A stretch of DNA of 62,899 nt, the filler included, from Octopus bimaculoides (lineage: Eukaryota): assembly GCF_001194135.2 (NCBI RefSeq). It is 4 parts of 4 records of this genome, joined end to end, with 100 filler letters (N's around TTAATTAATTAA, not from the genome) between each part and the next. Parts side by side here need not be neighbours in the genome. Positions count along the whole stretch, not along the records: positions 1 to 13,401 come from NC_069000.1; 3 more parts are not named here. The stretch is one strand, 5' to 3'. Position 1 is the first letter of the stretch. Every line of letters starts with the position of its first letter. The notes beneath the pieces were generated by a model. That model searched no databases. It saw only the letters and a program-made list of their open reading frames with translations, and had not been told where the DNA came from. Below are positions 2,283 through 13,110 of the stretch, piece after piece. The position numbers and the translations under genes were made by a program.

Positions 2283-3452
2283 NNNNNNNNNNNNNNNNNN
2301 NNNNNNNNNNNNNNNNNNNNNNNNNNNNNNNNNNNNNNNNNNNNNNNNNNNNNNNNNNNNNNNNNNNNNNNNNNNNNNNNNNNNNNNNNNNNNNNNNNNN
2401 NNNNNNNNNNNNNNNNNNNNNNNNNNNNNNNNNNNNNNNNNNNNNNNNNNNNNNNNNNNNNNNNNNNNNNNNNNNNNNNNNNNNNNNNNNNNNNNNNNNN
2501 NNNNNNNNNNNNNNNNNNNNNNNNNNNNNNNNNNNNNNNNNNNNNNNNNNNNNNNNNNNNNNNNNNNNNNNNNNNNNNNNNNNNNNNNNNNNNNNNNNNN
2601 NNNNNNNNNNNNNNNNNNNNNNNNNNNNNNNNNNNNNNNNNNNNNNNNNNNNNNNNNNNNNNNNNNNNNNNNNNNNNNNNNNNNNNNNNNNNNNNNNNNN
2701 NNNNNNNNNNNNNNNNNNNNNNNNNNNNNNNNNNNNNNNNNNNNNNNNNNNNNNNNNNNNNNNNNNNNNNNNNNNNNNNNNNNNNNNNNNNNNNNNNNNN
2801 NNNNNNNNNNNNNNNNNNNNNNNNNNNNNNNNNNNNNNNNNNNNNNNNNNNNNNNNNNNNNNNNNNNNNNNNNNNNNNNNNNNNNNNNNNNNNNNNNNNN
2901 NNNNNNNNNNNNNNNNNNNNNNNNNNNNNNNNNNNNNNNNNNNNNNNNNNNNNNNNNNNNNNNNNNNNNNNNNNNNNNNNNNNNNNNNNNNNNNNNNNNN
3001 NNNNNNNNNNNNNNNNNNNNNNNNNNNNNNNNNNNNNNNNNNNNNNNNNNNNNNNNNNNNNNNNNCTCAGACCACAGAACATCGAGAAATATATATATAT
3101 TCCAAATGTAAACGTCACGTGAGCTTCAAGATTTCTGTCTTAAGGGTCAGGTAGTGATCCCTCGAAGTGAAATCTAGTAAATCACTGTGATTCTGCGCAA
3201 TCCAGTTACTTTTGTAGGTACGTAATACAGATACAAGGGTCGCTGACACTTGTACAACCCCCGACTTCCCCACAGAAAAATAAGCAAAGTAAATGCAGAC
3301 TGGAAGAAATGACTGAGATGTTATGTAATAGAGATTAAGATGTGACAAGTTGACAAGATAAGACAGGAACAGGACTCGATATTTGCAGGACCATGATTGG
3401 TTGAATAAAACAAGGAAAACAGTAAAGAAATCATTCGTTTAATTTCTCATAC

Positions 3453-3529
<77 letters not shown>

Positions 3530-3943
3530 TACAAACACACACACCTATACAAACACACACACCTATACAAACACACGCATACATCAACATAAATATGAGT
3601 CTGTGTATGTTTGCATGTATAGATGGGTCGATAATGTTTACAACACTAACTCATAACTGAATGTGTATGTGTGTGTGTATCTATATACACTCACACACAC
3701 ACATACTAGCATACCCGTGTCGTCAAAAATGCCGACAGTTTTATTAATGATAAAAAATGGCACAGAAGCACAATGATAGAAACCACTGCTAAGAGTCAGC
3801 AATCTAGTAAGAATATGTACAAAGACAGAACTGAAGTGCTTGAAGAATCGGATATAGTTGTACGGTTTCGGCTGATAGTATCGTCTGCATATGTGTGCGC
3901 GTCTGTAAAGACACACACATGTATATATGCACATATACGTATA

Positions 3944-3975
<32 letters not shown>

Positions 3976-5389
3976 NNNNNNNNNNNNNNNNNNNNNNNNN
4001 NNNNNNNNNNNNNNNNNNNNNNNNNNNNNNNNNNNNNNNNNNNNNNNNNNNNNNNNNNNNNNNNNNNNNNNNNNNNNNNNNNNNNNNNNNNNNNNNNNNN
4101 NNNNNNNNNNNNNNNNNNNNNNNNNNNNNNNNNNNNNNNNNNNNNNNNNNNNNNNNNNNNNNNNNNNNNNNNNNNNNNNNNNNNNNNNNNNNNNNNNNNN
4201 NNNNNNNNNNNNNNNNNNNNNNNNNNNNNNNNNNNNNNNNNNNNNNNNNNNNNNNNNNNNNNNNNNNNNNNNNNNNNNNNNNNNNNNNNNNNNNNNNNNN
4301 NNNNNNNNNNNNNNNNNNNNNNNNNNNNNNNNNNNNNNNNNNNNNNNNNNNNNNNNNNNNNNNNNNNNNNNNNNNNNNNNNNNNNNNNNNNNNNNNNNNN
4401 NNNNNNNNNNNNNNNNNNNNNNNNNNNNNNNNNNNNNNNNNNNNNNNNNNNNNNNNNNNNNNNNNNNNNNNNNNNNNNNNNNNNNNNNNNNNNNNNNNNN
4501 NNNNNNNNNNNNNNNNNNNNNNNNNNNNNNNNNNNNNNNNNNNNNNNNNNNNNNNNNNNNNNNNNNNNNNNNNNNNNNNNNNNNNNNNNNNNNNNNNNNN
4601 NNNNNNNNNNNNNNNNNNNNNNNNNNNNNNNNNNNNNNNNNNNNNNNNNNNNNNNNNNNNNNNNNNNNNNNNNNNNNNNNNNNNNNNNNNNNNNNNNNNN
4701 NNNNNNNNNNNNNNNNNNNNNNNNNNNNNNNNNNNNNNNNNNNNNNNNNNNNNNNNNNNNNNNNNNNNNNNNNNNNNNNNNNNNNNNNNNNNNNNNNNNN
4801 NNNNNNNNNNNNNNNNNNNNNNNNNNNNNNNNNNNNNNNNNNNNNNNNNNNNNNNNNNNNNNNNNNNNNNNNNNNNNNNNNNNNNNNNNNNNNNNNNNNN
4901 NNNNNNNNNNNNNNNNNNNNNNNNNNNTCCAGACCTACACTAATACACACACACACACACACACACTATTATACCACTCTACCTTTAAAACACGAACCAA
5001 CGAGGAAGCCACTGTGTGTGCACCCGAACCTGCTAGAAATAGCAACTGAATATCCCTCAAATCACAATGTTTTCTCTTTAAGGTAAATAGAATCCGTTAA
5101 ATAACGCGATCCTGGGTCTCCTATTGTTCGAGAAAAACGGAAGAGTCACGGATGGAATGTCTTAGATCAGGTTTCCCTAACAACCAGACCGCATAGAAAG
5201 AAGAAGTCTATTAGCAAAGTGTTTTGGCATTAAACATGTAATATATTTGTTGCTGGGGGTGGGGCCAGCAAAAGAGATCGATAGGTTTAGAACAAGGGTT
5301 TAAAAAAAATAAAAGAAGTGTTGGAGTCGATCCCTTCGGTTAAAATTCTTCAAGATGGTGCCCCAGCATGGCCACAGTCCAGACCTTGG

Positions 5390-5620: not shown

Positions 5621-6079
5621 TGGTATATTATATATATACACACACATATACATATATACATATACATATATATATACATGTGCACATGTAGACATATATT
5701 TGCGGGTTTATATATTGGTGCAGAATATTAATAAAATTCAGTAAAAACACAAAAATGAATCAAAATTTGGAGCTGGTCTTGTTTTTCTTTTATTAACTTT
5801 TAAAATGGTTTCATCAACAGTTCTAAGCAATAAGGACGAGTCCAAATCCCGGAACTGTTTTAATGAACCATGGCAGGAACAATGACATATTCTTTATGGC
5901 ACCTTGTACACTTGCGTATATATTATTCTTTAGAAAGAATGTTATTGATTGTGACTTCGAAGTCACTATCTATAATATTCTTGTTAAAGAATAATAAGTT
6001 TGTACTCTACAAAAGTAAAGATGTAACTCATCAGATTAATGCGAAATCGTTTCTCTTATAACAGAACATAAAAACAGAC

Positions 6080-6601: not shown

Positions 6602-7162
6602 TCAATAATATTTTTGGTTTGCTATTGTTTCGATACGCCTCATCAAATAGGAATAGTCGTTGTTATCGACACGGCTCTTGAAATAAGGATACTTTTTATA
6701 AGAGTCATTGTTATCTTCATCGACGAACTGAACATGTTTTTCTGTTTCGAAACGTTGTTTCAGTGCCATGAACGACTGGCGACCAAAAGACTCACTTTCC
6801 CGTTCAACTTCATTCTCTGCATCACTTTCATCCGGGACTTCTGTTACAAAGGGTTTTTCATCGAATGATTGCAATTTGCTCTGACATTTCAGTTTGTTTA
6901 AAATATCTTCTTGGATTCCTTCTGAATTTGGGTCTTTCAAAAAGACGTATTTCGTATTTACACGTGGGTTAATATCAGCAGCAGACGATTGGAAATACTC
7001 CGCCATAGTTTCGTATGGAATTTCATTTGGATCTCCATTCTTTCTGATCAAACGTTGTTGTGATATATTTATCACATCTCTTTTGCAAGTTTCACCATCA
7101 AAAATGTCACGACTAAGCGGAATTTGAGCGGTATTGGAGTAAATTCTATTTTCAGGAACAAA
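6602..7162 (-). CDS. in-frame 186-codon continuation of the 614-aa ORF beyond a single TAA (readthrough, edited stop, nonsense allele or base error)
   Basis: 7162-7076 is 87 nt = 29 open codons (FVPENRIYSNTAQIPLSRDIFDGETCKRD), running in frame into the listed 7075-6602 ORF; similar amino-acid composition. Confidence 0.6.
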   Translation of the reverse strand, partial: FVPENRIYSNTAQIPLSRDIFDGETCKRDVINISQQRLIRKNGDPNEIPYETMAEYFQSSAADINPRVNTKYVFLKDPNSEGIQEDILNKLKCQSKLQSFDEKPFVTEVPDESDAENEVERESESFGRQSFMALKQRFETEKHVQFVDEDNNDSYKKYPYFKSRVDNNDYSYLMRRIETIANQKYY

Positions 7163-9007
7163 TTAGGGTTTAAACATGTTATATCTTTGAAATTCTCTTT
7201 CTTTTTCCCATGGAGTTACCATATCAATTGGTTGTTCAACCGATGTTTTAAAAAATCTCTCATGTACTCCTGGGACAGTGAAAGATGGCGGCTCACTAAA
7301 ATCTTCTCGAACATTCCTTTCTCTTCTTATCGTCTCAACTATTACTTCGGGATGTGATTGAAGAATAGGATGTTCTTCTCGTTGTTGTTGTTGTTGTGTT
7401 TGGTGTGTTTGTTGATGTCTGACAGGAACGTCCAAAGATCTGTTGACATAATCATGCAGAGATGCATTACTTAGCTTTATGTTCTTTCCGTAATCGTCTT
7501 CCTTCTTTTCCATATACTTCGCTGAACTTTTAAGAGTGACACCTTCATCAAGGGTTATGACGTCACTCCGGCGATTGCGTAAAACCACGACAGGTGGGCG
7601 AGATGACAAGGTTTCTTGAACAAATGCTTCGTCTCTTATTTGGGATTTTAGTTTATTCTCTTCTAAATCCGTTATGTACGTCTGAAAGGGATCGACCAGC
7701 CTGCCATGGCTGTCAACGTAATTTTCTTGAAAGTCCATTGAGTAATTCGACATGTCTATATTTTCTTCAAGAACCTTGAGAAGACGCATCAGCATCAAAG
7801 ACCGAGCAGTCTGATGGGAGTCGCCAAAGTTATTTCTTGTTTGGTTCGATGACGCAAAAGTGGAATTCGTCAAAGACTTCTCTTTCTTCTCCGGTATCAG
7901 GGACGCTATTTTAAGATTGGATTTTTTTGGCAGAACGTTGAAATTGGGAATTGTTTTCTGCAAATAAGTAAAATATTCTTCTTCAATTTTATCAATATCG
8001 GTTTCATTATTAAAGTTAGAACTATAAGGATCCGCCGAGATCTCTTGGAGGCTGATTGCGTCATGGCAATAAATGGGCTGACTTAAACCAAAATTATTCT
8101 GATGCTTCCTCCTTTGATAGTTGGAGAACTCAAAATGTGTCCGCGGTTCCACGTCATTCTGGTTCCAGTGGTAATTGTCATCGTCAGCATCGTTAATGAA
8201 ATCCCACTCATAATCTCGTGTTGGATTTGATAACTTCATTCGGTGTGTAGGGAATCTACAATATTCTTGCGTTGGGAATCGTGTGGGCTGCGTATAACAG
8301 TTACAACCACACGGGTTCATTCGAAAAGGTGGGCAATTTTGCCTGAAAGGGTTATTAATAAAATTCGGGAACCCAGTTGGAAAAGGAGGTCGATTTGGAG
8401 TATATTTATGAAAATTGTTATATCTTTGTAAATGAGGGTTTAAAAATGGGTTTAAAAACGATTTGCGAGGAACAAACGAAAAGTTCGATTGTTGTGGATA
8501 ATTTTTTTGAGAGTGAAGCATGTCCGAGTGTAATGGTGTCTGTTGTCGTAAGGAAATTTCTCCATCATGTCTCGGGACTCGGATTAACGCAAGAGAATTT
8601 TCTGCGAGATCCTTGCTGTCTTCTGTCATTAGAGAGCTTTCTAAAGGTTCCGCATGGCTTCTTCTTTTACTGCAGAAATTTATCTGATTGTTCATTTTAT
8701 CTTCCGTGCAACTGGTTGGTATTTCATGAAAAGACTGCGGCCGCAAAATCCTGCCGCCATCATAAGTCAGAAGAAGAGTTCGATCGTCATCATCGTCATG
8801 GAAATATGGCATATTTCTTGTCCGTCTGTTAACATTTTCACGTTTCATTTCAAATTGTTGTGGTGCGAATCGTTTAGAAACATCATACTGTTGCATTGAT
8901 TCTGGAAAAGACAAATTACGGCCATTTAACATGTTGCATCTGTTCAAATATGGCGGCAATTGTTGAGATTCTTGTGAATCAAAATCTGGCACATAAGATG
9001 GCAACAT
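7163..9007 (-). CDS. 614-aa uncharacterised, low-complexity (N/Q/S/P/F-rich) protein; single large coding exon
   Basis: 1845-nt uninterrupted ORF in AT-rich DNA where other ORFs are short; ATG start; no TE motifs; no recognisable domain. Confidence 0.8.
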   Translation of the reverse strand: MLPSYVPDFDSQESQQLPPYLNRCNMLNGRNLSFPESMQQYDVSKRFAPQQFEMKRENVNRRTRNMPYFHDDDDDRTLLLTYDGGRILRPQSFHEIPTSCTEDKMNNQINFCSKRRSHAEPLESSLMTEDSKDLAENSLALIRVPRHDGEISLRQQTPLHSDMLHSQKNYPQQSNFSFVPRKSFLNPFLNPHLQRYNNFHKYTPNRPPFPTGFPNFINNPFRQNCPPFRMNPCGCNCYTQPTRFPTQEYCRFPTHRMKLSNPTRDYEWDFINDADDDNYHWNQNDVEPRTHFEFSNYQRRKHQNNFGLSQPIYCHDAISLQEISADPYSSNFNNETDIDKIEEEYFTYLQKTIPNFNVLPKKSNLKIASLIPEKKEKSLTNSTFASSNQTRNNFGDSHQTARSLMLMRLLKVLEENIDMSNYSMDFQENYVDSHGRLVDPFQTYITDLEENKLKSQIRDEAFVQETLSSRPPVVVLRNRRSDVITLDEGVTLKSSAKYMEKKEDDYGKNIKLSNASLHDYVNRSLDVPVRHQQTHQTQQQQQREEHPILQSHPEVIVETIRRERNVREDFSEPPSFTVPGVHERFFKTSVEQPIDMVTPWEKEREFQRYNMFKP

Positions 9008-9854: not shown

Positions 9855-10030
9855 CTTTCTGCTTTAGGCACAAAGCCAGCAATTTAGGGGACGCGGGATG
9901 CGGGGAGTTAGTCGATTACATCGACCCCCAACGCTCAATTGGTACTTATTTCATCGACCCTCGAAAGGATGAAAGGCAAAATCTACCTCGATGGAATTTG
10001 AACTCAGAACGTAAAGACGGGCGAAATGCA
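9855..10030 (-). mobile_element. tRNA-derived SINE (Meta-domain-like core)
   Basis: Reverse complement of GTTCAAATTCC...GCCTTTCATCCTTTCGAGGGTCGATGAAATAAGTACC...GATGTAATCGACTAAC. Related pieces at about 13125-13175 and 46070-46280. Confidence 0.7.
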
Positions 10031-10059
10031 GTATTCAATGAAAAGGAAGGGAAATGACT

Positions 10060-10225
10060 ACAAAGGTTTACTTTGACCACTGAGCATGTACCACTGTGCT
10101 GTGCCTTGCAGCGATCCAGCCTCTGAAAACGGGTCCGGACGCCGCCTGCTCTCAGGACGCTTTCTAAGTAGCGATGGTCGACCCTATCGAATGCGTTGGA
10201 TTGATTCAAATTGATCAAGCACCCC
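10060..10225 (-). mobile_element. L1/Tx1-clade reverse transcriptase fragment
   Basis: INLNQSNAFDRVDHRYLESVLRAGG resembles the Tx1 RT motif LDQxKAFDRVDHxYLxxVLxxxG. Confidence 0.7.
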
Positions 10226-11827
10226 CACCCCCAACAGCAGTTTAACAAAGTAGACAAAATGCGATGAAGTGTAATATTTTTGTTGCGGGAATATTAATGA
10301 ACTGACTAGATTACACTTGTCGTTTAACCCTAGGTAAGCCGTGACCGGGTAAACTTCTATTCAATGTTAATCCGATGTTGACCAGTTCTTTTTATTTACC
10401 GAGGATTGATAAGATTTCACTCGGGTGGGTTGGTTTTTACACAATATCCACCCTGATCAGGCAGATTATTTTGTAATCAGGTGACCTTGTCGGTAGTGAA
10501 ACAGCTCACAGCGACAAAGTTAAACAGATTTGATTATAAGGTTTTTAATCTAAATCAGTGATCTCTTTCCCACCGACAAGGAGGGCGAATCTGTTGCCTT
10601 CTTGGGCTGGGGATTGAAATAGAGAAGAGGAGTGCTAGAAGGCTAGGGAGTGGAAGAGGGTAGCGGCGTGAGAAAGGTAAAAAGAATGAAGATTGTCTGT
10701 TGTTTGTATATGGCTACTTGTGTTGAACGCAGAGATAGCGGAATCTTATTTAATTACTAATATGAAAAAAAGAAAGAAACACATATAGCTGCGATCACAT
10801 GATTTCTATAAAGACAACCTTGACACAACCGAATAATACGTTTGTCATTCAAGTGATTTCTGTGGTCCGTTATCTGCAAACAAACCCTTCACAATGGAGC
10901 TGATTTGCCCCAAAAAGTGTTTTCCAACGAATCTATGAAATCTTTAAGATTAGAAGAACTCTTGGAAAAAAAGAATCGTTCTGACAAGGCAAATGCAAAT
11001 TTATCTTATTTTAAAGAATTTCAAAATCGATTTTGCAAACGTTGTTAAATATGTTTACATCTGCCAGAAAAGGATGACTTACGTGTTTCTTAATTTTATG
11101 ACTGATTACTAAATCCAGCAAGGCCCACAGAATTGGTAAAACATTAATTCTACCAACTGTTGGCAAAGTTCGACATATCTTATTGCTCAAAACAGAGACT
11201 CGTTTCATTAAAAACAGTCACAAATTGAGAAAATGATCACCTCAAAGACACATTCTTAGAGGCTTGTCCAGTTTTAGTAAGAATTGTATTTAATCGACTC
11301 TATTTGGGACCGAAACCTTATTGTTTGCTTACTTTTAAGTTATAAAAGAAAAGAAAATAACTCAGGTCTTTTTATGTGCCAGACATTTTGTAAGAACTGC
11401 GAGAGAAGGATCGGATCCATGTTTCTTGTAAAAGACTTTTATTTATTCTTGTTTACTCTAGGCACAAGGCCCGAAACCATTGTGTGTGTGTGTACACGCG
11501 CATATATATGTATGTATGTATGAATATATGTATATATGTATGTATAAATATATATACACACACACATATGTACATACATATATATAATATAAGTATGTGG
11601 GTTTATGTATGCATGTATAGATGAGAAATGATAAACACAGGTAAGCAAACAAACAAACAAACAAACAAACAAACCTAAAGAGAAATCATATCGACAGACA
11701 TGGAAACAGATTGAAGCCGGAACGAAATACTATTTTCTTTCCTCAAATAATTCGCCACAGAAACCTTCTCGCCTTGGTTGAGTCGCTATGTAACAGCAAT
11801 GAAAACAACAAGAGGAACACTACTCAC

Positions 11828-12504: not shown

Positions 12505-13110
12505 TCTTTGTCACTTATGATAAAGCCTTCACTCTCTGCCTTTAGCCCTGAGTTCCGTAGCCATTGATGGGTTTGCTTCTGGTCCACATCAGCTTGTTTG
12601 TTACGGGCCACATATTGGCCATGCAGAGGTTTTTATTCCCAGCCAATTGTTCAAACGTATTTTGCTTTGCTATTGATTTCACCTTCTTTGCAACTGCAGT
12701 TGCTGCACTTCTCTCGTTCTGTTCAACCTGGGTATTATGCATAAACTCACTTGAAAATATTTTGCCCTCCTTCATAACAGAATGAAGTTTCTTACGTCTT
12801 TTATGGTTTTCAACAAGCTTTAGCATCCAGTCGTTAGATGTTTCAAGATATTTTGCCAGTCCAATTGTGGTGGTTTTATTGGAGATTTCAAATTGGATCA
12901 AACCTCGACCTCCGTGAGCTCTGGGTAGGTAAAGACGATCTGCGTCTGCCTTTCGGTGGTGCATCTTATTGTAAGTCAGCAGCTTACGGATTTTCCTGTC
13001 AATCCTCCTTGTTTCGCTCATATTCCAGTTCAACACATTGAAACTGCAAATAAGAACAGGAACTGCTGAGGAATTTATAGCTAACACCTTCTTACGTGCA
13101 TTGCTTTTCC
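12505..13110 (-). mobile_element. R4/Dong-clade (RLE) non-LTR retrotransposon internal fragment
   Basis: AINSSAVPVL..FNVLNW...IDRKIRKLLTYNKMHHRKADADRLYLPRAHGGRGL, then LKAESEGFI; typical post-RT region of R4/Dong elements. Confidence 0.85.

What the first reader, a model, noticed from the sequence alone, without database searches (positions are those of the whole stretch)
6602..9007. 801-codon frame interrupted by one in-frame TAA: candidate edited or read-through stop
Seen: the 614-aa ORF ends ...RYNMFKP-TAA (7165-7163). The same frame then stays open for 186 more codons (FVPENRIYS...ETIANQKYY-TGA at 6602); the ORF track reports this tail as a separate ORF. Such a long open run right after the stop is unlikely by chance in DNA this AT-rich, so the tail is or recently was coding. 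Established: coleoid cephalopods recode mRNA heavily by ADAR A-to-I editing; UAA becomes sense (UGG, Trp) only if both adenosines are edited; editing-dependent correction of premature stops is known in filamentous fungi. Inference: this could be an editing- or readthrough-switched C-terminal extension. The TAA-TTT context is not a classic leaky-stop context, and a nonsense allele, young pseudogene or consensus error (e.g. CAA/GAA/TAT) are simpler alternatives.
Basis: partly seen in the sequence, partly recalled or inferred. Interest (0 to 1): 0.8.

Follow-up and report, generated by a model that had tools for sequence, protein, structure and literature searches.

The report
Recent nonsense change in octopus gene
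The in-frame TAA is real in this Octopus bimaculoides assembly, but two sister octopus species carry CAA (glutamine) there, so it is most simply a very young truncating mutation or a consensus error, not an RNA-editing or read-through switch.

Summary
On the minus strand a 614-codon ORF (9007-7166) ends at TAA (7165-7163), and the same frame stays open for 186 more codons to TGA (6604-6602). Chance expectation for that open run is about 3e-6.

The window is Octopus bimaculoides (GCA_001194135.2). The single-exon orthologues in O. vulgaris and O. sinensis are uninterrupted and carry CAA (Gln) where the window has TAA, a single C-to-T difference. The tail is as constrained as the head (dN/dS 0.14-0.18 against 0.21-0.24) and has one 3-nt indel, while the noncoding flanks are full of frameshifting indels. 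So the stop is evolutionarily young.

Nothing supports recoding:
- UAA needs two edits to become UGG.
- The result would be Trp, not the ancestral Gln.
- The origin is C-to-T, not the G-to-A of restorative editing.
- No duplex is predicted at the site.
- UAA-U is a poor read-through context, and the stop is not conserved.

In passing: the protein carries one reflectin-type motif but is not a canonical reflectin.

The parts
7166..9007 (-). Head: the 614-codon ORF annotated in public databases as a complete 614-aa O. bimaculoides protein (P0003). It is orthologous to residues 1-~615 of the O. sinensis protein (789 aa).
   Evidence: dN/dS against O. vulgaris is 0.21 and against O. sinensis 0.235. 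All indels are multiples of 3.
7163..7165 (-). In-frame TAA. The orthologous codon is CAA (Gln) in both O. vulgaris and O. sinensis, so this is one C-to-T difference on the coding strand, in the context CCC-TAA-TTT. It is not at a CpG.
6647..7162 (-). Tail: 172 sense codons collinear with the C-terminal 172-173 residues of the intact orthologues. It has no frameshift and no second stop.
   Evidence: dN/dS is 0.18 and 0.14. p-distance is 0.068-0.072 with one 3-nt indel.
6644..6646 (-). TTG (Leu) at the position where O. vulgaris and O. sinensis have their terminal TAG stop.
6602..6643 (-). Thirteen further sense codons (MRRIETIANQKYY) and then TGA (6604-6602). In the orthologues this stretch lies beyond their TAG, and it ends at an aligned in-frame TGA in all three species.
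7700..7759 (-). Single reflectin-type motif, IDMSNYSMDFQENYVDSHGR (aa 417-436; the similarity extends to ...LVDPF at aa 441). It lies in the head, upstream of the stop.
   Evidence: Motif definition from PMC9779258.

Best explanation
The TAA is a DNA-level, evolutionarily very young nonsense change (CAA Gln to TAA, one C-to-T transition) carried by the sequenced O. bimaculoides genome. It sits in a single-exon, Octopus-restricted gene for a mostly disordered protein with one reflectin-type motif. Ordinary termination at this UAA would give the 614-aa product and drop the conserved 172-residue C-terminus. The tail still looks coding only because too little time has passed for it to decay. The allele may be fixed in the species, polymorphic, or heterozygous in the sequenced animal. 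Shown here: the sense codon in orthologues, the intact and constrained tail, and the absence of features that favour editing or read-through. Inferred: that translation actually stops there, and that the base is a true allele rather than a consensus error.
For: (1) O. vulgaris (P0001/L001) and O. sinensis (P0002/L002, XP_036366955.1, 789 aa) have uninterrupted single-exon ORFs with CAA at the TAA position. The loci are collinear at about 89% identity over 4.2 kb including both flanks, so they are true orthologues. (2) Tail dN/dS (0.18 and 0.14) is no higher than head dN/dS (0.21 and 0.235). Fisher's test of head against tail gives p=0.85, and tail omega is below 1 at p=2e-6. (3) The flanks carry 19 indels in about 1.7 kb, 16 of them not multiples of 3, while the 516-nt tail has a single 3-nt indel. 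(4) A rough model: if the tail had been unconstrained for the whole O. bimaculoides branch, the joint probability of seeing no new stop, no frameshift and at most 16 nonsynonymous differences is 1e-4 or less. For half the branch it is about 0.01 or less, and it becomes unremarkable only at about a quarter of the branch or less. (5) The public annotation already ends the protein at this TAA (P0003, 614 aa).
Against: There is no outgroup, so the pairwise dN/dS averages both lineages, and the age bound assumes equal branch rates. An intact, constrained tail is also what a functional rescue by recoding would predict, so comparative data alone cannot exclude that. No expression or protein data exist here for O. 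bimaculoides.
Confidence: 0.62

Rival explanations
1. Consensus or assembly error: the animal's genome actually has CAA (or another sense codon), and the T is a wrong base call in the Illumina-only draft contig that was carried unchanged into the chromosome-scale release.
For: The window is a gap-rich draft contig, with N runs at about 2290-3050 and 3975-4900. The v2 assembly is identical over the ORF and so is not independent. The tail shows no decay at all, which is exactly what an error predicts. The difference is a single base next to a CCC run.
Against: From general knowledge, substitution errors in deep-coverage short-read consensus are rare, far rarer than the roughly 6% real differences seen between the species in this ORF. 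No other anomaly such as a frameshift occurs in the ORF.
Confidence: 0.2
2. Functional recoding: the UAA is real and is bypassed in a useful fraction of molecules. The route would be either ADAR editing of both adenosines (UAA to UGG, Trp) or ribosomal read-through, and the result would be a switchable 801-aa isoform alongside the 614-aa one.
For: Coleoids edit mRNA heavily, and stop-loss editing is recognised in their transcriptomes (PMC8382921). The tail is intact and under purifying selection in the pairwise comparison. From general knowledge, near-cognate decoding of UAA often inserts Gln, which would restore the ancestral residue in the rare read-through products.
Against: Orthologues carry a sense codon, so the stop is not a conserved recoding signal. 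UAA needs two edits in the same molecule, because single edits give UGA or UAG, which are still stops. The coleoid pipeline treats only UAG-to-UGG as editable. Restorative or harm-permitting editing repairs G-to-A changes (PMC6881472), whereas this is C-to-T and editing would give Trp, not Gln. No structure is predicted at the site: the 300-nt fold has z=-0.70, no helix longer than 6 bp lies near the stop, the longest helix anywhere is 10 bp, and no inverted repeat covers the site. UAA is the least leaky stop, and the high read-through consensus is UGA-CUA (PMC4359377), whereas the context here is UAA-UUU.
Confidence: 0.05
3. Older, fixed truncation in the O. bimaculoides lineage. The 614-aa protein is the functional form, and the tail stays open for another reason, such as separate translation from an internal start or constraint at the RNA or DNA level.
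For: The ancestral terminal stop position also differs in O. bimaculoides (TTG against TAG), as might happen once the tail is no longer read. The 614-aa model is what databases annotate.
Against: The pattern of constraint in the tail is specifically protein-coding: synonymous differences exceed nonsynonymous ones (omega 0.14-0.18), and the only indel is 3 nt. The age model rejects long neutrality. From general knowledge, reinitiation after a 614-codon ORF is very inefficient. The first AUG in the tail lies about 60 codons in. A single change at a stop codon is expected in about one case in five at flank divergence, so TTG against TAG carries little weight.
Confidence: 0.05

Closest known systems
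Ordinary lineage-specific or segregating nonsense (stop-gain) variant truncating a protein-coding gene
   Same: A single transition away from the orthologous sense codon. The downstream frame is still intact and shows no excess nonsynonymous change. The gene is single-exon in the orthologues' gene models, so the truncated mRNA would probably escape exon-junction-dependent decay (inference from general knowledge).
   Different: Zygosity and population frequency are unknown. The gene is uncharacterised, so the cost of losing the C-terminus is unknown.
Premature-stop-codon-correction (PSC) A-to-I editing in filamentous fungi (Fusarium graminearum, Neurospora crassa; PMC10776026, PMC4817773)
   Same: An in-frame premature stop followed by a long, conserved, still-open coding tail.
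   Different: The fungal cases are UAG to UGG with an ancestral Trp. Here the codon is UAA with an ancestral Gln. TAA is the uneditable control in that system. The enzymes also differ: the fungal editing is ADAR-independent.
Coleoid ADAR stop-loss and restorative recoding (PMC8382921, PMC6881472)
   Same: The same animal group, with pervasive editing of coding sequence.
   Different: Recognised stop-loss events are UAG to UGG. Restorative editing reverses G-to-A substitutions, while this is C-to-T. No duplex is predicted.
Programmed or basal stop-codon read-through (UGA-CUA(G) type in animals; PMC4359377)
   Same: Coding-like conservation downstream of a stop.
   Different: In true read-through genes the stop itself is conserved across species. 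Here only one species has it. The stop identity (UAA) and context (UUU) are unfavourable.
Reflectins (cephalopod structural-colour proteins)
   Same: The head carries one motif, IDMSNYSMDFQENYVDSHGRLVDPF. It matches reflectin repeats at 43-54% identity over 27-28 residues in the best alignments, and the repeats of long unnamed reflectin-motif proteins at 50% over 34 residues. It fits the M/FD(X)5MD(X)5MD(X)3/4 pattern with I and V in place of two Met, and it resembles the N-terminal reflectin motif ...SMDFxGRYxDSxxRxVDP.
   Different: It has one motif rather than several. Its composition is ordinary (A, I, L and K are present; Y 4%, M 3%, W 0.5%, against 15/12/9% with no A/I/L/K in a Sepia reflectin). 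It is 790-800 aa rather than about 200-400 aa.

Membership tests
A-to-I editing-corrected premature stop (stop-loss recoding) | Stop codon convertible to Trp by one A-to-I event (UAG or UGA to UGG) | tested here: not met
   The codon is TAA, so both adenosines must be edited in the same molecule. The literature treats UAG-to-UGG as the editable stop and uses TAA as the uneditable control.
A-to-I editing-corrected premature stop (stop-loss recoding) | Restorative logic: the ancestral or orthologous codon has G where the focal genome has A (TGG ancestor) | tested here: not met
   Orthologues have CAA (Gln). The change is C-to-T at codon position 1. Model described in PMC6881472.
A-to-I editing-corrected premature stop (stop-loss recoding) | Double-stranded RNA structure embedding the edited adenosines (ADAR substrate) | tested here: not met
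   The 300-nt fold has z=-0.70. In folds of 303-1003 nt the helices near the stop are 6 bp or shorter, the longest helix anywhere is 10 bp, and pairing probability at the stop is roughly average to moderately above it (0.23-0.73 per base against a mean of 0.54-0.55). No inverted repeat covers 7163-7165. This is prediction only.
A-to-I editing-corrected premature stop (stop-loss recoding) | A-to-G mismatches in RNA reads that are absent from DNA reads | not testable with these tools
Programmed stop-codon read-through | Leaky stop and context (UGA-CUA(G), UAG-CARYYA) | tested here: not met
   The context is CCC-UAA-UUU. UAA is the least read-through-prone stop, and the consensus is UGA-CUA (PMC4359377).
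Programmed stop-codon read-through | The stop codon itself is conserved among species, with coding conservation downstream | tested here: not met
   Downstream coding conservation is present, but the stop is absent from both orthologues.
Programmed stop-codon read-through | Footprints or peptides beyond the stop | not testable with these tools
   No ribosome-profiling or proteomic data were accessible.
Young nonsense allele / recent C-terminal truncation | Orthologues carry a sense codon one substitution away | tested here: met
   CAA against TAA.
Young nonsense allele / recent C-terminal truncation | The downstream frame shows no decay yet: no extra stops or frameshifts, and dN/dS is not raised relative to the upstream part | tested here: met
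Young nonsense allele / recent C-terminal truncation | The variant is present in the raw genomic reads of the animal (homozygous or heterozygous) | not testable with these tools
No independent contig was on record.
Reflectin | Several tandem reflectin motifs M/FD(X)5MD(X)5MD(X)3/4, plus an N-terminal motif | tested here: not met
   A relaxed pattern scan finds one motif in the head and none in the tail, against 3-7 in reflectins. Definition from PMC9779258.
Reflectin | Unusual composition: rich in Y, M, R, N and W, nearly devoid of A, I, L and K | tested here: not met
   head Y 3.9, M 2.8, W 0.5, A 2.1, I 3.9, L 7.2, K 4.9%. Sepia-type reflectin P0007: Y 15.3, M 12.4, W 9.1, and A/I/L/K all 0.
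Reflectin | Significant sequence similarity to reflectin repeats | tested here: met
   In an exhaustive phmmer search of 1.84 billion representatives, the only hits beyond the query itself were reflectin-motif proteins, at E=1.5e-9 to 4e-4.

The most novel reading that the evidence does not exclude
The TAA is a true, fixed O. bimaculoides base, and the conserved C-terminus is still made in some tissues. The route would be double A-to-I editing (UAA to UGG) or regulated read-through that inserts Gln. That would make a reflectin-motif protein with a conditionally added 186-residue tail, the first animal case of a UAA premature stop rescued at the RNA or translation level.
Probability: 0.04. Interest if true: 0.7.

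Novelty: new member of a known kind. Interest (0 to 1): 0.15.

Why it matters
As it stands this is mainly an annotation point. The O. bimaculoides 614-aa model is a truncated version of a roughly 790-aa Octopus protein, either through a young stop-gain allele or through a base error in the reference, and users of that proteome should know it. It is also a useful negative example for scans that flag a stop followed by a long open frame in cephalopods as candidate editing. The orthologous codon (CAA, not TGG) and the codon type (UAA, not UAG) are quick discriminators. Only if reads showed a genuine homozygous TAA together with edited or read-through products would it become an interesting recoding case.

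Tried and rejected
I then tried read laying once, with two O. bimaculoides WGS accessions named in PMC9115989, and it was closed too. I made no further attempts. Genomic zygosity and RNA editing were therefore not tested.

2. Independent contigs. Exact-protein look-ups of the tail ORF (157-aa GTG-start form and 134-aa ATG-start form) in per-run assemblies found nothing.

3. Outgroup. A word-indexed search of 5.8 billion proteins found only the one 90% cluster (O. vulgaris, O. sinensis, O. bimaculoides). An exhaustive phmmer search of 1.84 billion representatives added only motif-level reflectin hits. So I could not polarise changes onto the O. bimaculoides branch.

4. Domain and fold. There was no Pfam hit for the head, the tail or the orthologue. 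The AlphaFold2 single-sequence model of P0001 had mean pLDDT 35 and pTM 0.22, so I ran no fold search, which would have been meaningless.

5. Literature. There was no mention of LOC118767063, XP_036366955 or CAI9738044, and I found no report of UAA-to-UGG stop rescue in cephalopods.

6. A 30-nt in-frame GT...AG 'mini-intron' spanning the TAA (GTTTAAACCCTAATTTGTTCCTGAAAATAG, read). I rejected it for two reasons. The orthologues translate these ten codons as conserved protein, and from general knowledge 30 nt is below workable metazoan intron size. It was not tested with reads.

7. Alternative genetic code or selenocysteine. I rejected both. TAA is not a Sec codon, and the orthologues use TAG and TGA as ordinary stops.

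8. A coordinate slip of mine. In one search I set the tail/extension boundary 12 nt off. I found this and corrected it, and the conclusions did not change.
Full report
**1. Observation**

The feature is in the sequence exactly as described. On the minus strand an ATG at 9007 opens a 614-codon ORF ending ...RYNMFKP-TAA, with TAA at 7165-7163. The same frame continues for 186 sense codons to TGA at 6604-6602.

The open tail is not chance. With the local base composition a codon is a stop with probability 0.066, so 186 open codons have P of about 3e-6. None of 200,000 shuffles of the tail was stop-free, and the other five frames of the same stretch contain 4-20 stops.

**2. Source and orthologues**

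A search of 5.8 billion proteins with the read-through translation (X at the stop) returned one cluster. Its members are listed below.

| Protein | Species | Length | Note |
|---|---|---|---|
| P0001 (CAI9738044.1) | O. vulgaris | 765 aa | model starts at an internal Met |
| P0002 (XP_036366955.1) | O. sinensis | 789 aa | full-length |
| P0003 | O. bimaculoides | 614 aa | the window's own head |

- P0003 is encoded on O. bimaculoides GCA_001194135.2, chromosome CM046620.1.
- That locus is identical to the window over the 2406 nt, so the window is O. bimaculoides.
- The window still contains N gaps, so the chromosome-scale release reuses the draft contigs and does not confirm the base independently.
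- The O. vulgaris and O. sinensis genes are single, uninterrupted exons.
- Both loci align collinearly with the window at about 89% identity over 4.2 kb, including both flanks, so they are orthologues.

**3. The codon**

Both relatives read ...RYNMFKP-Q-FVPE... with CAA where the window has TAA.

- This is one C-to-T transition at the first codon position, in the context CCC-[C/T]AA-TTT, and not at a CpG.
- The tail is open and collinear in all three species and strongly constrained between O. vulgaris and O. sinensis (omega 0.08). The ancestral state must therefore have been a sense codon.

**4. Is the tail decaying?**

Nei-Gojobori estimates:

| Comparison | Head (613 codons) | Tail (172 codons) |
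|---|---|---|
| O. bimaculoides vs O. vulgaris | 0.21 | 0.18 |
| O. bimaculoides vs O. sinensis | 0.235 | 0.14 |

- Head and tail do not differ (Fisher p=0.85), and tail omega is below 1 (p=2e-6).
- The noncoding flanks give a neutral yardstick: p-distance 0.083-0.089, with 19 indels in about 1.7 kb, 16 of them not multiples of three.
- The tail has p-distance 0.068-0.072 and one 3-nt indel. The head has only 3- and 6-nt indels.
- I ran a rough model assuming equal branch rates. If the tail had been unconstrained for the whole O. bimaculoides branch, the joint probability of no new stop, no frameshift and at most 16 nonsynonymous differences is 1e-4 or less. For half the branch it is about 0.01 or less. 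It becomes unremarkable only for about a quarter of the branch or less.
- So either the stop is very young, or it is not really in the genome, or the tail is still being translated.
- Caveat: without an outgroup, pairwise values average the two lineages.

**5. Testing the recoding ideas**

Editing:
- UAA must be edited at both adenosines in the same molecule, because UGA and UAG are still stops.
- The product would be Trp, not the ancestral Gln.
- Restorative or harm-permitting editing in coleoids is defined by G-to-A substitutions that are edited back (PMC6881472). This substitution is C-to-T.
- The coleoid editome pipeline merges ORFs only across UAG-to-UGG events (PMC8382921).
TAA is deliberately used as the uneditable allele, and for most of the genes tested it behaved like the deletion mutant (PMC10776026).
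- Structure prediction gives no ADAR-type duplex. A 300-nt fold has z=-0.70. In 303-1003-nt folds no helix near the stop exceeds 6 bp, and the longest helix anywhere is 10 bp. No inverted repeat covers the site.

Read-through:
- UAA is the least leaky stop, and the high read-through consensus is UGA-CUA (PMC4359377). The context here is UAA-UUU.
- The comparative hallmark of functional read-through is a conserved stop followed by conserved coding sequence. That fails here, because the stop exists in only one of three species.

Recoding is therefore unsupported and disfavoured, but not formally excluded.

**6. Best explanation and rivals**

| Explanation | Confidence |
|---|---|
| Real, young CAA-to-TAA stop-gain allele (fixed, polymorphic or heterozygous); 614-aa protein lacking the conserved C-terminus | about 0.6 |
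| Consensus error in the draft contig, which predicts the same undecayed tail and can only be separated by reads | about 0.2 |
| Functional recoding by editing or read-through | about 0.05 |
| Older fixed truncation with the tail preserved for another reason | about 0.05 |

Taken together, the readings with a DNA-level difference and no recoding come to about 0.85-0.9.

**7. What the gene is**

- There is no Pfam domain in the head, the tail or the orthologue.
- The AlphaFold2 single-sequence model of the intact orthologue is low-confidence throughout (mean pLDDT 35). That fits a largely disordered protein but is not informative.
- In an exhaustive phmmer search of 1.84 billion representatives, the only hits beyond the query itself matched one short stretch, aa 408-441 of the head.
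- Those hits are reflectins (Sepia, Acanthosepion, Euprymna), an O. bimaculoides reflectin-repeat protein, and two long unnamed proteins with several such repeats.
- The motif IDMSNYSMDFQENYVDSHGRLVDPF (window 7759-7700 for its core) fits the reflectin motif pattern and resembles the N-terminal reflectin motif (PMC9779258).
- The protein has a single copy and an ordinary amino-acid composition. I describe it as a reflectin-motif-containing protein known so far only from Octopus, not as a reflectin.
- The motif lies upstream of the stop, so both isoforms would keep it.

**8. A second stop-related difference**

- O. vulgaris and O. sinensis end at TAG straight after ...DYSY.
- O. bimaculoides has TTG (Leu, 6646-6644) there and runs 13 more codons to a TGA that is aligned and in frame in all three species.
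- Without an outgroup the direction is unknown. One change in a stop codon is expected in roughly one case in five at flank divergence, so I give it little weight.

**9. Verdict**

The claim that the tail is or was coding is confirmed.

This is an ordinary kind of feature, a stop-gain difference or a base error, in an uncharacterised gene. Interest is low (0.15). The residual novel reading has a probability of about 0.04.

Noticed in passing
window 7700-7759 (-), aa 417-436 of the head; similarity extends to aa 408-441: A single reflectin-type motif (IDMSNYSMDFQENYVDSHGRLVDPF) sits in an otherwise non-reflectin-like protein of about 790 aa. It resembles the N-terminal reflectin motif (SMDFxGRYxDSxxRxVDP) at least as well as the internal repeats.
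   Followed up: partly
window 6644-6646 (-), with 6602-6643: O. bimaculoides has TTG (Leu) where O. vulgaris and O. sinensis have their terminal TAG. All three share an aligned in-frame TGA 13-14 codons further on. The direction of change is unknown without an outgroup.
   Followed up: partly
P0004 (1270 aa, Logan transcript contigs) and P0006 (1103 aa, ENA): These are long, unnamed, Met-rich proteins with at least 3-4 reflectin-like repeats by the pattern scan (PERYMDLSRYTMDFQGRFMDxxGRxxDP) and a conserved acidic, coiled C-terminus. They are the closest non-orthologous relatives of the window protein. Their source organisms are not shown.
   Followed up: no
P0012 = XP_014779611.1 (O. bimaculoides): This protein is named 'TBC1 domain family member 5 homolog A-like' in RefSeq. 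It clusters at 90% or more with P0005, which has seven reflectin motifs and a reflectin-like composition, so the name looks wrong.
   Followed up: no
L001 9926-10000 (O. vulgaris): The O. vulgaris gene model starts at an internal Met. The ORF is open 25 codons further upstream to an ATG that is conserved with O. sinensis and O. bimaculoides (MLPSY...), so the 765-aa model is probably N-terminally short.
   Followed up: partly
window 9946-10257 (-) and 12542-13087 (-): These ORFs of 103 and 181 aa look, by eye, like retrotransposon reverse-transcriptase remnants (for example ...NAFDRVDHRYL...). Neither has a Pfam hit at E<=0.01. Both regions are alignable to O. vulgaris at 85-89% identity, so the insertions predate the species split.
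   Followed up: partly
window 5921-5996: An imperfect palindrome with 38-nt arms, 87% complementary and no spacer, lies about 600 nt downstream of the ORF. It borders the end of the long collinear block shared with O. vulgaris.
   Followed up: no
window ~1240-1360, ~2060-2290, ~3450-3585, ~3920-3975; N runs ~2290-3050 and ~3975-4900: Dinucleotide microsatellites flank two assembly gaps. These repeats produce many spurious long ORFs in the ORF list, and the gaps show that the contig comes from the draft assembly.
   Followed up: no
L003 1-5697 (-), i.e. upstream of the gene in O. bimaculoides, beyond the window: The neighbouring called gene has VWA and (weak) chitin-binding CBM_14 Pfam hits. 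No neighbour was called within 10 kb in the O. vulgaris or O. sinensis loci.
   Followed up: no
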